NCBI RefSeq assembly: GCF_001194135.2
Contig: NC_069007.1
Coordinates: 13,428,642 to 13,464,514 of the forward strand
DNA: 35,873 nt
Direction of reading: 5' to 3'
From: Octopus bimaculoides
Lineage: Eukaryota
Shown: positions 23,565-35,475 of the stretch, in pieces
Layout of the letters: each line of letters begins with the position of its first letter
Numbering within the stretch: the first letter of the stretch is position 1
The notes under the pieces: generated by a model
Database searches by the model: none
Seen by the model: the letters and a program-made list of their open reading frames with translations, nothing else
Told to the model about the DNA's origin: nothing
Program-made: the position numbers and the translations under genes

Positions 23565-24311
23565 TTGCAAAATTGGGCCATCTCTATTCACTAGTCTGGG
23601 TTACTTCTTTTTCAAATTTTCAAGCGTACAATCAATTTCCTGCCCATACGATGTTCCTGTTACCGTTTTACCTTGTTGCAAAAATGAATAATGACTCCCT
23701 TCGCAGATCACCATACAGTGACTACTAAGTTTTTAGGGTGCAATGGTGAGTTTGCGTAGTGCTTAGGTAACTCTCCTGCATCTAATCACTGTCCTGTTCT
23801 GTTGACAAAAAGCATCCATTTCTCATCACATGTAAAATTGGTCTTTTTCCAGTCGAGAAAGCAGTAAGGAGAACACTTCGAGGCGTCTGTTTTTTTGAAT
23901 CTCGTTCAGTTGATGTGGAACAAATCTATCTGTTTTCTTGACTTTTCCAATTTTTTGAAGGTGTACAAAAACAGTTGTGCAAGATGTTTGGAGTTGTGAT
24001 GAAAGTTTTCGAACCTTTGTTCTCGGATTTTGTTCAACCGAAGCATTTAATCCATGTCGAATAACTGATTTTGGCCTAACCCTTGGTTTATTTTCAAGGC
24101 TATCATCTCCTGAACGAGAGCTTTGGAACCATCTCTGAACAGTTCTGATGTCAATAAAACTATTACCAAAGGCCCGCTTAATATTCCGTAGGGCTTCTGC
24201 GGCAGAGTGACCCGGTTCGTACTCATACTCATACGAGAAAATCACTCAACATAGTTTGGATGTTATCAGTTTGATAAGGTCTGTGGGTACGAATTTTGTA
24301 TACCAATATTG
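23565..24311 (-). mobile_element. Mariner transposon relic (5' part of transposase)
   Basis: HTH region (GHSAAEALRNIKRAFG..TVQRWF), FVPHQL (WVPHEL), then after a frameshift TCDEKW, LHPKNLVVTVW*SAKGVI and PRLVNRDGPILQ. It ends before the HDNA motif. A putative TIR-like TATTGGTATACAAAATTCGTACCC lies at ~24286-24309. Confidence 0.9.
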
Positions 24312-25140: not shown

Positions 25141-25353
25141 TTTTCAAATTTTGGCACAAGGCCAGCAAGTTCGGGGGGGAAGGGGTAAGTCGATTAGATC
25201 GACCCCAGTGTTTAACTGGTATCTATTTTATCGATCCCGGAAGAATGAAAGGCAAAGTCGACGTCGGCGGGATTTGAACGCAGAACGTGCAGACGGACGA
25301 AACGTTGCTAATCATTCAGTCCGGCATGCTAACGATTCTGCTTGCTCGGCGCC
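25141..25353 (-). mobile_element. tRNA-derived SINE family B
   Basis: Homologous to 12621-12829 along its whole length. Confidence 0.9.
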
Positions 25354-25384
25354 TTATATTTACACACACACACACACACACGAC

Positions 25385-25487
25385 ACAGTTGACCTCAGGC
25401 TATAATAGTGGACACTTGTGCAATGTGACACGAAGTGAGATTGAACCCGGAACCATGTGGTTCGGAAGCAAACTTCTCACAACACAC
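25385..25487 (-). mobile_element. SINE family A head fragment
   Basis: GATTGAACCCGGAACCATGTGGTTCGGAAGCAAACTTCTCAC is the reverse complement of the family head. Confidence 0.8.
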
Positions 25488-25535
25488 TCAACTCAAAACC
25501 GCGCCTTGTTACACATTTTTTTAATATAAGCTGGT

Positions 25536-30081: not shown

Positions 30082-30232
30082 CTACATTCATACATGATAT
30101 ACTAANNNNNNNNNNNNNNNNNNNNNNNNNNNNNNNNNNNNNNNNNNNNNNNNNNNNNNNNNNNNNNNNNNNNNNNNNNNNNNNNNNNNNNNNNNNNNNN
30201 NNNNNNNNNNNTACATTCATAATTATATATGC

Positions 30233-31110: not shown

Positions 31111-31348
31111 AAAGTCCTTTTTTTATAAGTATATATAAAATATACATCTATAATGTATACGCTTTTGTATGTCGAATTTCTGGTGCATGTATGTATGTAT
31201 GTATGTACGTATGTATGCATGTATGTATGTATGTATGTATGTATGTATGTATGTATGTATGTATGAGTATTGGTGTATATAATATTGTATGTAAGTATGT
31301 GTATGTATGTATGTATGTATGTATGTATGTATGTATGTATGTATGTAT

Positions 31349-32225
31349 GTCATTATTCAGTTTATTTCAAGATTTCTTGCCAATAGAGAAAGAACAGGTT
31401 TCTAGCCTACATCCAAGGTTCCTTCATTGGAATTTTAACATCAACAACGTATGTATGTATGTATGTATGTATGTATGCATGACACTGACATGCAGTGTCT
31501 GTGCAAGACCCTGCCTCAGTAGAGCTGGACTCATGAGTCATCTTCGTAGTCATAAAGCAAGACCGATGATTGACCACCAGGCCGCTGGTGATGATGCTAC
31601 ACACCATATTAGTCATGTCTGTCGGGCATGTGGAAGGGAGTGTGATTCAGCAGGAGGACTTAAACGACACGCAATGGTACATGGAGCCCAATTACAACAA
31701 CATCCAGCTATTGCCAGTAAAGGTTTTGGTTGCCAACTCTGTGCAAGACATTGTGGATCTTTGGCTGGGCTAAAAAGTCACATTCGATCACAGCACCGAT
31801 AAGTTAAGCTTCGTGCAATGGCCATACTCGATAACGAGGGGCAGCCATCATGTATGTATGTATGTATGTATGTATGTATGTGCAGATTCATATGTTTTAT
31901 CTATGTATTCTCATGGTATTTAGGCAGTGAGTTACATATCCTAGGGCCCCAATAATTACAAGTATAAACTCAAACTTGTAATCTGGATAGAGTAACTGCA
32001 GATTCCTCAATAGTTCAGCATAGGTGTTCTCTTTTTCATTGATCTTCAGCTTTATGTTAACATCCGCTGGGCAGCTAATTTCCACAACTGTGCACAGTTT
32101 CTCTTCTCTTATCCCAAATCATTACATCAGGTCTGTTCTACTTACATTTTATTGAGGTTTTCACTGGTACATTCCTCCAGTATTCCTTTTCATTATGACT
32201 GGCTGTCTTCTAGCATATTGTGGAT
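31349..32225 (-). mobile_element. R4/Dong-type RLE retrotransposon 3' fragment ending in (TACA)n, with nested insertion
   Basis: SHNEKEYWRNVPVKTSIKCK*NRPDVMIWD / REEKLCTVVEISCPADVNIKLKINEKENTYAELLRNLQLLYPDYKFEFILVIIGALG, an RPD..D..E..K..Y RLE signature. The 3'UTR is split by 31479-31850. Confidence 0.85.
31479..31850 (+). mobile_element. RTE-like LINE 3' end with three intact C2H2 zinc fingers (ORF 31479-31802)
   Basis: CSVCARPCLSRAGLMSHLRSH, CRACGRECDSAGGLKRHAMVH and CQLCARHCGSLAGLKSHIRSQH*. There is a short 3'UTR and (TGTA)n on both sides. Confidence 0.8.
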
Positions 32226-32679: not shown

Positions 32680-32822
32680 CACGCAACTTAGCGATTCGGG
32701 AAAGAGACTGATAGAATAAATACCAGGCTTAGAAGATAAGTACTGGTGTCGATTCATCCGACTAAAATTTCGTGGTGGTACCCCAGAATGGCTGCAGTCT
32801 AATGGCTGGAACAAGTAACAGA
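32680..32822 (+). mobile_element. SINE family A 3' half
   Basis: AACTTAGCGATTCGGGAAAGAGACTGATAGAATAAATACC..CCCCAGAATGGCTGCAGTC..GAACAAGTAA. Confidence 0.85.
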
Positions 32823-32983
32823 TAACAGATATATACACAAACTTGTTATTAGTTCAAATATGCTTAAGACTTATTCGAACCCGTAAGAAAGGCATTCACA
32901 GTATTTTTTCATGGAGAAAATGTCTATCTGTAGACAAATAGGTGTAGATACACAGAGTCAACCCACAGCCTCACCTAACCTGA

Positions 32984-33031
32984 CTGTAGAATGAAAGCAT
33001 TTCGGAGTGGTTATCTCCTCTTCAGCTACAG
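32984..33031 (-). ncRNA. Type I hammerhead ribozyme motif, complete core
   Basis: Minus strand reads CTGTAG-CTGAAGA-GGAG-ATAACCA-CTCC-GAAA-TG-CTTT-CA-T-T-CTACAG. This gives a 6-bp stem I, CUGANGA, a 4-bp stem II closed by G10.1-C11.1, GAAA, a 3-bp stem III and an AUU triplet. Predicted cut is between 32990 and 32989. Confidence 0.75.
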
Positions 33032-33519
33032 AGCTCGGAAAGGGAAACGCTGCGAACTGACATAAAGGTTAGTATATTGCAAATTGCGCATTTGCCACTA
33101 ACTTCAAACTTGCAGAGATGAAAGTTATTTATTCCATGTCACGTTTAAATAAATCACAACATGCTACTAAGCTTACGCATGCGTATGTGTCATGGTTTAG
33201 TGATGTCTGTAAGCAAACATACGACAAAATATTGTCATATGCACGGTGTTGACTACCTTGACTTCAGCTGCATTTCAATAAGTTGCAACAGTTCTCGCCT
33301 GGTGATTGCAATGACGTGAAAGTCAAATCCTCAGTTTTACTAAATTATCTGCGTACACACTTGGTTATATGTATCGACAGTTCAACCAAAGCAACCACAT
33401 ATTTACAAACTCCGGAAACTCAGAAAGCCTTGTCACTTTGTTAGCGAGCAGCATGAACTCTCTCAACAAGAACTGAAATAAAACTCTAAGAAAAACGTAT
33501 ATACATACATACATATACG

Positions 33520-34819: not shown

Positions 34820-35475
34820 NNNNNNNNNNNNNNNNNNNNNNNNNNNNNNNNNNNNNNNNNNNNNNNNNNNNNNNNNNNNNNNNNNNNNNNNNNNNNNNNN
34901 NNNNNNNNNNNNNNNNNNNNNNNNNNNNNNNNNNNNNNNNNNNNNNNNNNNNNNNNNNNNNNNNNNNNNNNNNNNNNNNNNNNNNNNNNNNNNNNNNNNN
35001 NNNNNNNNNNNNNNNNNNNNNNNNNNNNNNNNNNNNNNNNNNNNNNNNNNNNNNNNNNNNNNNNNNNNNNNNNNNNNNNNNNNNNNNNNNNNNNNNNNNN
35101 NNNNNNNNNNNNNNNNNNNNNNNNNNNNNNNNNNNNNNNNNNNNNNNNNNNNNNNNNNNNNNNNNNNNNNNNNNNNNNNNNNNNNNNNNNNNNNNNNNNN
35201 NNNNNNNNNNNNNNNNNNNNNNNNNNNNNNNNNNNNNNNNNNNNNNNNNNNNNNNNNNNNNNNNNNNNNNNNNNNNNNNNNNNNNNNNNNNNNNNNNNNN
35301 NNNNNNNNNNNNNNNNNNNNNNNNNNNNNNNNNNNNNNNNNNNNNNNNNNNNNNNNNNNNNNCGAAAGACGAACGAAAGCGCTATTATATGTATAAAATA
35401 AATGAAAGAAGTTATTCCAAAATTCTGACGACTTTTTTTTCAATATTTACTTCTGTACATCACACCTAACACTCT

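What the first reader, a model, noticed from the sequence alone, without database searches (positions are those of the whole stretch)
32984..33031. Complete canonical type I hammerhead ribozyme in unannotated sequence
Every conserved core position is present, with a 6-bp stem I, a G-C-closed stem II and a 3-bp stem III with tetraloop. The triplet is AUU, which fits NUH but is usually weaker. TG..CA in stem III could be CpG decay of an ancestral CG..CG (GUH) that preserved pairing. Other CTGANGA hits in the window lack these helices, so this is unlikely to be chance. The flanking ~600 bp is not assignable to a SINE or LINE by eye.
Basis: partly seen in the sequence, partly recalled or inferred. 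Interest (0 to 1): 0.85.

Follow-up and report, generated by a model that had tools for sequence, protein, structure and literature searches.

The report
Lone hammerhead ribozyme motif, octopus genome
A single, sequence-perfect copy of the small self-cutting hammerhead RNA motif lies on the minus strand of this octopus-like genome piece; it is very unlikely to be chance, but such motifs are already known to be common in animal (including cephalopod) genomes, so it is a new example of a known thing whose activity is still untested.

Summary
On the minus strand, 33031->32984 reads CUGUAG|CUGAAGA|GGAG-AUAACCA-CUCC|GAA|AUG-CUUU-CAU|U|CUACAG. Every conserved hammerhead core position is present. Helix I is 6 bp, helix II is 4 bp closed by G10.1-C11.1, and helix III is 3 bp with a tetraloop. 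The predicted cut is between 32990 and 32989. It is the only such motif among 12 CTGANGA sites. The chance expectation is 3e-8 to 2e-5 per window and about 0.003 to 2 per 2.7-Gb genome.

The helix sizes match the published canonical animal type I hammerhead. The flanks extend helix I into a 105-nt, strand-specific hairpin.

Several things fall short. Rfam scores it at only 17 bits (HH9; gathering score 52). Helix III is predicted to be weak and has a competing fold. There is no second copy, tandem repeat or Penelope ORF in the window. No homologue could be retrieved, so there is no covariation or conservation evidence.

The context is octopod DNA rich in SINE, LINE and microsatellite sequence.

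Best reading: a solitary copy left by a hammerhead-carrying retroelement, possibly still able to self-cleave weakly. Cleavage is untested. It is a new member of a known kind, of modest interest.

The parts
32984..33031 (-). Complete type I hammerhead motif (48 nt)
   Evidence: Sequence read. It is the only descriptor hit in the window. Infernal aligns it to Hammerhead_HH9 model positions 13-61 with the same three helices, at 17.2 bits.
33026..33031 (-). Helix I, 5' strand (CUGUAG, positions 2.6-2.1)
   Evidence: Forms 6 Watson-Crick pairs with 32984-32989. Pair probabilities are 0.91-0.99.
33019..33025 (-). Catalytic core C3 U4 G5 A6 N7 G8 A9 (CUGAAGA)
   Evidence: It matches the conserved CUGANGA box.
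33004..33018 (-). Helix II (GGAG/CUCC, 4 bp, G10.1-C11.1 at its base) with 7-nt loop 2 (AUAACCA)
   Evidence: Pair probabilities are 0.94-0.95.
33001..33003 (-). Core G12 A13 A14 (GAA)
32991..33000 (-). Helix III (A15.1-U16.1, U15.2-A16.2, G15.3-C16.3) with loop 3 (CUUU)
   Evidence: It is predicted to be weak: pair probability is about 0.01, and the hairpin alone is not stable.
32989..32990 (-). Predicted cleavage site: 3' of U17 (32990), 5' of C1.1 (32989)
   Evidence: The position follows from the core numbering. The chemistry (2',3'-cyclic phosphate plus 5'-OH) is established hammerhead knowledge (PMC6155905). Cleavage was not tested here.
32984..32989 (-). Helix I, 3' strand (CUACAG, positions 1.1-1.6)
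33032..33061 (-). 5' arm of the looped extension of helix I. It comprises loop 1 5' side GAGCU (33036-33032), short helices CC, CCU and UU, and the 13-nt distal strand 33061-33049.
   Evidence: Seen in the MFE and centroid folds; pairs verified. The flank hairpin is -25.8 kcal/mol against shuffles at -17.2+-3.1 (z -2.8, 5/500). The opposite strand gives only -14.9.
32957..32983 (-). 3' arm of the looped extension of helix I. It comprises loop 1 3' side UCA (32983-32981) and the distal strand 32969-32957, which pairs with 33049-33061 (9 Watson-Crick plus 4 G.U pairs).
32832..33494 (-). Unique, AT-rich (38% GC) block that carries the motif. It is bounded by a SINE 3' part (32689-32831, + strand) and a TG-rich microsatellite that starts at about 33495.
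   Evidence: It has no similarity to anything else in the window or in L001-L004, and no internal second copy. RNA of 32840-33240 is more structured on the ribozyme strand (z -2.7, 0/100) than on the other strand (z -1.1).

Best explanation
This is a genuine hammerhead-type sequence, not a chance look-alike. It is a solitary type I hammerhead with the architecture typical of animal genomes, sitting at the tip of a 105-nt imperfect hairpin in a unique AT-rich block of an octopod genome.

Origin (inferred): most likely a dispersed single copy, active or relic, left by a hammerhead-carrying retroelement. Such elements are the non-LTR retrozymes and the pseudo-LTRs of Penelope-like elements.

Mechanism if the minus strand is transcribed (inferred from established hammerhead chemistry): helices I-III assemble the core. 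The 2'-OH of U17 (32990) then attacks the phosphate before C1.1 (32989), leaving a 2',3'-cyclic phosphate and a 5'-OH.

Expected behaviour (inferred): helix III is weak, a competing pairing exists, the triplet is AUU and there is no tandem partner. I therefore expect at best slow cleavage as a monomer. A single site cuts a transcript once and cannot release a circular RNA.

Shown here: the sequence, the helices, the statistics, the strand-biased structure and the genomic context. Inferred: the origin, the activity and any biological role.
For: - The core is perfect and all 13 helix pairs are Watson-Crick.
- It is the only hit among 12 CTGANGA sites.
- Chance expectation is 3e-8 to 2e-5 per window and 0.003 to 2 per genome.
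- Helix I of 6 bp, helix II of 4 bp and a short helix III with a tetraloop are the published canonical metazoan/invertebrate type I architecture.
- The conserved G10.1-C11.1 pair is present. One search lists it as a mark of real motifs.
- Infernal's best family for the site is a type I hammerhead, HH9, aligned over the whole core with the same helices.
- Helix I has an internally looped extension, which the review reports as necessary for monomeric cleavage of newt and salamander type I motifs. The extension is stronger than shuffles (z -2.8). It contains 4 G.U pairs, so it folds well only on the ribozyme strand (-25.8 against -14.9 kcal/mol).
- The 401-nt block is structured only on that strand.
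- The block has 38% GC, within the <45% reported for animal retrozymes.
- Cephalopod genomes are known to hold hammerheads and Penelope-like elements.
- Most Penelope-associated motifs are reported as dispersed single copies.
Against: - No relative was found, so there is no covariation, copy-number or conservation evidence.
- No tandem repeat, second copy or Penelope ORF lies within 35.9 kb.
- Rfam hammerhead models score it at no more than 17.2 bits, far below gathering.
- The competent fold is 3.6 kcal/mol above the MFE, and helix III has a pairing probability of about 0.01. In the 663-nt fold the hammerhead helices are partly replaced.
- Loop 3 (CUUU) is not palindromic, unlike the usual animal type I loop.
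- Loop 1 - loop 2 contacts could not be assessed.
- AUU is an uncommon and, in minimal ribozymes, slower triplet (my own background knowledge; not verified here).
Confidence: 0.6

Rival explanations
1. Chance look-alike: an unselected sequence that happens to satisfy the hammerhead descriptor and never had ribozyme ancestry.
For: - It is a single copy with no relatives.
- Rfam scores are weak.
- Under the laxest definition (G.U allowed, loops up to 40 nt), about 2 such motifs are expected per 2.7-Gb genome.
- A complete 5/4/3-bp look-alike with the same AUU triplet did turn up by chance inside a bacterial coding sequence, among 51 pattern matches in the metagenome collection (L055).
Against: - This motif is all Watson-Crick with short loops. 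The expectation for that class is 3e-8 per window and 0.003 per genome, and none occurred in 40 Mb of matched random sequence.
- It also has features the descriptor did not ask for: exactly the canonical 6-bp and 4-bp helices, a strand-specific looped extension of helix I, and strand-biased structure of the surrounding RNA.
Confidence: 0.12
2. Domesticated host ribozyme: a solitary hammerhead kept by selection in an octopus transcript (intron or UTR), where it processes the RNA. The amniote intronic HH9 and HH10 are proposed to work this way.
For: - It is solitary and fully intact although it sits among decayed repeats.
- HH9 is the best Rfam alignment, with a nearly identical helix I (CUGCAG in HH9, CUGUAG here).
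- Isolated type I motifs are the form described for mammals.
Against: - No gene, exon or transcript evidence exists in the window.
- Cross-species conservation could not be tested.
- Helix III is weak and a competing fold exists.
- The score is far below the HH9 gathering score.
Confidence: 0.1
3. One unit of a still active retrozyme array (tandem 150-450 bp repeats giving circular RNAs) whose neighbouring units were lost or collapsed in this gap-rich short-read assembly.
For: - The assembly is 20% N, with 17 gaps.
- Animal type I hammerheads usually sit in tandem repeats.
- The block is AT-rich and its RNA is structured.
Against: - The nearest gaps (30106-30211 and 34820-35362) are 1.8 kb or more away, and the block is bounded by a SINE and a microsatellite, not by a gap.
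- No partial second unit lies at either edge and there is no internal similarity.
Confidence: 0.08
4. 5'-processing ribozyme of the neighbouring LINE-type element on the same strand. This would parallel the HDV-like ribozymes that cut R2-type elements out of co-transcripts.
For: A LINE-type 3' fragment lies downstream on the same strand (31338-32137). Ribozyme processing of non-LTR elements is documented (mentioned).
Against: - The LINE copy is 5'-truncated to its last ~100 codons plus 3' UTR.
- It is separated from the motif by about 850 nt that contain a microsatellite and an opposite-strand SINE.
- The full-length relative in L002/L003 and the copies in L001/L004 have no hammerhead by descriptor or covariance model.
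- The flank does not match those loci.
Confidence: 0.03

Closest known systems
Canonical animal type I hammerheads of satellite DNA / non-LTR retrozymes (newt and axolotl satellites, Schistosoma Sm-alpha, Acropora, Mytilus)
   Same: - Type I topology.
- Helix I of 6 bp and helix II of 4 bp, with G10.1-C11.1.
- Short helix III capped by a tetraloop (invertebrate style).
- Internally looped extension of helix I.
- AT-rich, highly structured surrounding RNA.

   Different: - Solitary: there is no 150-450 bp tandem repeat.
- Loop 3 is not palindromic.
- The loop 1 and loop 2 sequences are not recognisably the conserved ones.
- The triplet is AUU.
- It lies below the Rfam thresholds.
Minimal hammerheads of Penelope-like elements (pseudo-LTR HHRs)
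   Same: They are often found as dispersed single motifs left by truncated elements, keep the conserved G10.1-C11.1 pair, and occur in invertebrates including molluscs and cephalopods.
   Different: Those motifs have a longer helix II (6-8 bp), a shorter helix I (4-5 bp), an unpaired base between A9 and 10.1, and little or no helix III. None of this applies here. The window has no RT or GIY-YIG ORF and no pseudo-LTR.
Rfam Hammerhead_HH9 (RF02275), the intronic type I hammerhead of amniotes
   Same: It is the best-scoring Rfam family. The alignment covers the whole core (model positions 13-61) with the same three helices and a nearly identical helix I. It is also solitary rather than tandem.
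   Different: The score is 17.2 bits against a gathering score of 52. The distal parts of the model are not matched. The phylum is different, and there is no evidence of intronic location or conservation.

Membership tests
Hammerhead ribozyme (class) | Conserved core: C3 U4 G5 A6 N7 G8 A9, G12 A13 A14, A15.1-U16.1 pair, H17 not G | tested here: met
   CUGAAGA (33025-33019), GAA (33003-33001), A(33000)-U(32991) and U17 (32990).
Hammerhead ribozyme (class) | Three helices around the core | tested here: met
   6, 4 and 3 Watson-Crick pairs. Helices I and II are stable in the predicted ensemble; helix III is not.
Hammerhead ribozyme (class) | Site-specific Mg2+-dependent self-cleavage 3' of position 17 | not testable with these tools
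   This needs in vitro transcription and a cleavage assay.
Hammerhead ribozyme (Rfam clan CL00010 families) | Covariance-model score at or above the family's gathering score | tested here: not met
   There is no gathering-level hit in the window. The best is HH9 at 17.2 bits against 52, E 0.036 in a 96-nt search.
Type I topology | Helix I open-ended; helices II and III closed by loops | tested here: met
   Loops AUAACCA and CUUU close helices II and III. The 5' and 3' ends leave through helix I and its extension.
Canonical metazoan type I hammerhead | Helix I of 6 bp, helix II of 4 bp, short helix III with a small loop | tested here: met
   6 bp, 4 bp and 3 bp plus tetraloop, against the description in PMC4209133 and PMC7229834.
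Canonical metazoan type I hammerhead | Palindromic loop 3 / positions 15.2-16.2 that allow a dimeric extended helix III | tested here: not met
   Loop CUUU is not self-complementary. The predicted dimer gives two 3-bp segments around a 4x4 internal loop, which is no gain.
Canonical metazoan type I hammerhead | Conserved loop 1 - loop 2 tertiary contacts | tested here: inconclusive
   An internal loop 1 (GAGCU/UCA) and a 7-nt A-rich loop 2 exist.
Non-LTR retrozyme | Tandem repeats of about 150-450 bp, each with a hammerhead | tested here: not met
   There is a single motif: no repeat of the block, no degenerate copy and no second descriptor hit.
Non-LTR retrozyme | Low GC (<45%) and compact, highly paired RNA | tested here: met
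   GC is 38%. The 401-nt RNA has z -2.7 on the ribozyme strand only. This is suggestive but not specific.
Non-LTR retrozyme | Expression as linear and circular unit-length RNA | not testable with these tools
   No transcript data were available.
Penelope-like element hammerhead | Located in a pseudo-LTR flanking an RT + GIY-YIG ORF | tested here: not met
   No RT or GIY-YIG signature appears in any frame of the 35.9-kb window. The only RT-related piece is a LINE-type C-terminal fragment.
Penelope-like element hammerhead | Minimal architecture: helix II of 6-8 bp, helix I of 4-5 bp, extra base between A9 and 10.1, little or no helix III | tested here: not met
   Helix II is 4 bp, helix I is 6 bp, there is no extra base, and helix III is 3 bp.
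Hammerhead_HH9/HH10 (domesticated intronic) | Conserved orthologous position in host-gene introns across species | not testable with these tools
   No octopus genome could be searched by DNA. Protein-based routes to an orthologous locus found nothing.

The most novel reading that the evidence does not exclude
The motif is a selectively maintained, solitary self-cleaving ribozyme of octopods. It would be an invertebrate counterpart of the amniote intronic HH9/HH10, acting on a host transcript through the strand-specific 105-nt hairpin. Alternatively, it is the first seen member of an undescribed cephalopod hammerhead family that standard Rfam annotation misses.
Probability: 0.12. Interest if true: 0.55.

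Novelty: new member of a known kind. Interest (0 to 1): 0.3.

Why it matters
If it is active, this is one more natural type I hammerhead, from a lineage (octopods) where individual motifs have not been described, and one that Rfam-based annotation would miss.

Its combination of features is slightly unusual and could inform how monomeric type I motifs fold:
- a canonical 6/4-bp architecture;
- a non-palindromic helix III;
- an AUU cleavage site;
- a long G.U-containing extension of helix I.

It does not open a new question. Hammerheads linked to retroelements are already known to be abundant in animal genomes, including a cephalopod.

Tried and rejected
1. Rfam at gathering level on the whole window gave nothing. 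At E<=10 on 601 nt there was no hammerhead hit, only chance-level snoRNA/sRNA hits.
2. A six-frame translation of the flank (32840-33500), searched in the 5.8-billion-protein collection to reach related DNA through called ORFs, gave no hit.
3. The same trick with single-copy-looking ORF fragments within 10 kb gave no hit. An exact look-up of the zinc-finger ORF found nothing on record.
4. Loci around relatives of the LINE fragment (O. vulgaris L001; ENA L002-L004) hold copies of the LINE and SINE but nothing like the ribozyme block. They have no hammerhead by BLAST, descriptor or covariance model.
5. A metagenome scan with helix I and the core fixed gave 0 hits. With helix II and the core fixed it gave 51 unrelated hits. 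The only complete look-alike (L055) lies in a bacterial coding sequence, so I rejected it as chance.
6. Supplementary files and full-text searches for the ribozyme strings or for octopus hammerheads gave nothing relevant.
7. A second CTGANGA 309 nt upstream and a GAAAUGC/AGCUGAAG juxtaposition looked like a degenerate tandem unit, but local alignment is at shuffle level.
8. A tRNA/SINE-like (Sm-alpha-type) origin: ARAGORN finds no tRNA-like gene.
9. C/D snoRNA hits (E 1-3) were rejected as chance.
10. A Monte-Carlo version of the chance estimate timed out and was replaced by the analytic estimate.
11. A literature check for AUU-triplet kinetics did not find usable data.

Full report
**What is there**

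Read on the minus strand, 33031->32984 is CUGUAG CUGAAGA GGAG AUAACCA CUCC GAA AUG CUUU CAU U CUACAG. In standard hammerhead numbering:
- Helix I has six Watson-Crick pairs (33031-33026 with 32984-32989).
- C3-A9 is CUGAAGA (33025-33019).
- Helix II has four pairs, beginning with the conserved G10.1-C11.1, and a 7-nt loop.
- G12 A13 A14 occupy 33003-33001.
- Helix III is A15.1-U16.1, U-A and G-C, closed by CUUU.
- Position 17 is U (32990).

The predicted scissile bond is therefore between 32990 and 32989, and the triplet is AUU.

**Is it more than chance?**

- A descriptor scan I wrote (exact core, helices with G.U allowed, loops 3-40 nt) finds this as the only hit on either strand, even with helices relaxed to >=3/2/1 bp. 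The other 11 CTGANGA sites have no such helices.
- In 40 Mb of first-order Markov sequence with the window's composition there were 72 lax hits, 5 at >=4/3/2 bp and none at >=5/4/3 bp.
- An analytic estimate for a motif at least this good (perfect core, G10.1-C11.1, helices >=6/4/3) gives two bounds. With Watson-Crick pairs only and loops of 3-12 nt, the rate is 5e-13 per site. With G.U pairs and loops of 3-40 nt, it is 4e-10 per site. That corresponds to 3e-8 to 2e-5 per window and 0.003 to 2 per 2.7-Gb genome.
- In 380 kb of real fetched DNA, sites not selected by the search pattern gave three lax hits and none at >=4/3/2, in line with the random model.

Chance is therefore very unlikely for one window and unlikely even genome-wide. 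The metagenome scan is a reminder that chance motifs do exist at very large scale. Among 51 matches to helix II plus the core, one (L055) formed a complete 5/4/3-bp look-alike inside a bacterial coding sequence.

**How hammerhead-like is it by independent models?**

- Rfam finds nothing at gathering thresholds, and no hammerhead at E<=10 when 601 nt are searched.
- When only 96 nt are searched, the best family is Hammerhead_HH9, a type I hammerhead. It scores 17.2 bits against a gathering score of 52, with E 0.036. The alignment covers model positions 13-61, with the same three helices and an almost identical helix I (CUGCAG in HH9, CUGUAG here).
- So Infernal recognises the fold, but the sequence is not a member of any curated Rfam hammerhead family by score.

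**Comparison with what is published**

- Cervera and de la Pena describe canonical metazoan type I hammerheads as having helix I of 6 bp, helix II of 4 bp, interacting loops 1 and 2, and a short helix III with a small palindromic loop. They list the G10.1-C11.1 pair as a mark of genuine motifs (PMC4209133).
- Invertebrate motifs typically have a 2-bp helix III capped by a tetraloop. They usually lie in 150-450 bp, <45% GC tandem repeats (non-LTR retrozymes) that are expressed as circular RNAs (PMC7229834).
- The Penelope-associated minimal motifs are built differently: helix II of 6-8 bp, helix I of 4-5 bp, an extra base after A9, and no helix III.
- The motif here has the canonical 6/4-bp architecture, not the Penelope one. 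Its loop 3 (CUUU) is not palindromic and it stands alone.
- Cephalopods are already known to carry hammerheads (235 Rfam Hammerhead_1 hits in the giant squid draft) and Penelope-like elements.

**Structure around the motif**

- The flanks continue helix I through an internal loop (GAGCU/UCA) and short helices into a 13-bp distal helix, 33061-33049 with 32957-32969, made of 9 Watson-Crick and 4 G.U pairs.
- With 35-nt flanks this hairpin is -25.8 kcal/mol, against -17.2+-3.1 for shuffled flanks (z -2.8, 5/500). The opposite strand reaches only -14.9, because the G.U pairs become A.C.
- RNA of 32840-33240 has z -2.7 (0/100 shuffles) on the ribozyme strand and z -1.1 on the other strand. For the whole 663-nt block z is -1.8.
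- An internally looped extension of helix I is what the review reports as necessary for monomeric cleavage by newt and salamander type I motifs (PMC6155905).
- These are modest, single-sequence signals. The helix was found by folding this strand, so the G.U argument is not independent.

**Is it likely to be active?**

- Nearest-neighbour folding keeps helices I and II (pair probabilities above 0.9).
- It replaces helix III (probability about 0.01) with a 4-bp pairing of U4-N7 (UGAA) with UUCA. The competent secondary structure is -6.3 against -9.9 kcal/mol for the MFE.
- A helix III dimer gives no gain.
- Such models ignore the tertiary structure of the core, and weak helices III are normal for animal type I motifs. 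Activity therefore cannot be decided in silico.
- From background knowledge (not verified here), AUU obeys the NUH rule but is rare in nature and slow in minimal ribozymes.

**Context**

- The window is a gap-rich (20% N), microsatellite-rich eukaryotic scaffold.
- A retroelement fragment at 31900-32118 (minus strand) has its best named relative in Octopus vulgaris. Its DNA is 85-89% identical to an O. vulgaris chromosome segment. The source is therefore an octopod.
- In a full-length relative, that fragment follows an RVT_1 reverse transcriptase. It is a 5'-truncated LINE-type copy, not a Penelope GIY-YIG domain.
- The ribozyme block (32832-33494) is unique within the window and within the fetched loci. 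It is bounded by a SINE 3' part (32689-32831, + strand) and a TG-rich microsatellite.
- No RT or GIY-YIG signature occurs in any frame of the window.
- A covariance model built from the motif finds no other copy, even a degenerate one, in the window or in 50 kb of related loci. The block has no internal second unit and contains no tRNA-like gene.

**Search for relatives**

No tool here can search cephalopod genomes by DNA. Indirect routes all failed to give a homologue:
- six-frame protein searches of the flank and of neighbouring ORFs;
- an exact ORF look-up;
- two metagenome pattern scans;
- literature and supplement searches.

The CpG-decay suggestion for helix III (ancestral ACG...CGU giving AUG...CAU) is compatible with mild CpG depletion (o/e 0.72) but cannot be tested.

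**Verdict**

- Most likely explanation (0.6): a solitary copy left by a hammerhead-bearing retroelement. It may still be able to cut minus-strand transcripts once, slowly, at 32990/32989.
- Rivals: chance (0.12), a domesticated host ribozyme (0.10), a unit of an array collapsed in assembly (0.08), and a LINE 5'-processing ribozyme (0.03).

It is a new member of a known kind. Interest is modest (0.3) because hammerheads are already known to be widespread in animal genomes, cephalopods included. Cleavage, copy number and conservation are all still to be shown.

Noticed in passing
window 31338-32137 (minus strand); L002 4589-6477: This is a 5'-truncated LINE-type fragment. Its C-terminal domain (NRPD...E...K...VIGALG) follows an RVT_1 reverse transcriptase in a full-length relative and has no Pfam match. 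It looks like an uncharacterised restriction-like (PD-(D/E)xK) endonuclease domain; that reading is my inference.
   Followed up: partly
window 31191-31802 (+ strand): This ORF has three C2H2 zinc fingers and is preceded by microsatellite-encoded MYVC repeats. It lies in a stretch (31481-31914, 433 nt) that is only 162 nt long in the O. vulgaris copy of the same LINE 3' region, so it looks like an insertion or a variable segment.
   Followed up: partly
window 23829-24245 (minus strand): A mariner/Mos1-type transposase N-terminal fragment (HTH_48, E 4e-10).
   Followed up: no
window 32689-32831 (+), 21420-21567 (+), 8473-8580 (-), and ORF-level traces near 4552-4698, 7797-8078, 14056-14364, 15842-16291, 21188-21418, 25278-25526: There are many copies of one SINE-like repeat. 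Its translation repeatedly gives '...LNPKPCGWEA...'. ARAGORN calls none of them a tRNA.
   Followed up: partly
window, 17 gaps (e.g. 431-1211, 9955-10946, 34820-35362): 7149 of 35873 bases (20%) are N, and long (ATGT)n, (AC)n and (TG)n tracts fill much of the rest. ORF lists are dominated by artefacts of these tracts.
   Followed up: no
L002 7431-11238 and L003 7423-11230: In the ENA assemblies that hold the full-length LINE relative, the neighbouring genes include a Pox_A32-type ATPase and a DNA_pol_B_2 fragment, which suggests a Polinton/Maverick-like element.
   Followed up: no
L055 546-590: A complete hammerhead-like motif (helices 5/4/3 bp, same AUG...CAU helix III and AUU triplet) lies inside a GC-rich bacterial-looking coding sequence (...PEAEEEYLSEMPDILL...). 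I judged it a chance match, and it is a useful false-positive example.
   Followed up: yes
window 33260-33345 (minus strand): A second CTGANGA (33328-33334) lies 309 nt upstream of the ribozyme, and the string GAAAUGCAGCUGAAG juxtaposes two ribozyme segments. Local alignment against the ribozyme region is at shuffle level, so this is not a degenerate tandem unit.
   Followed up: yes
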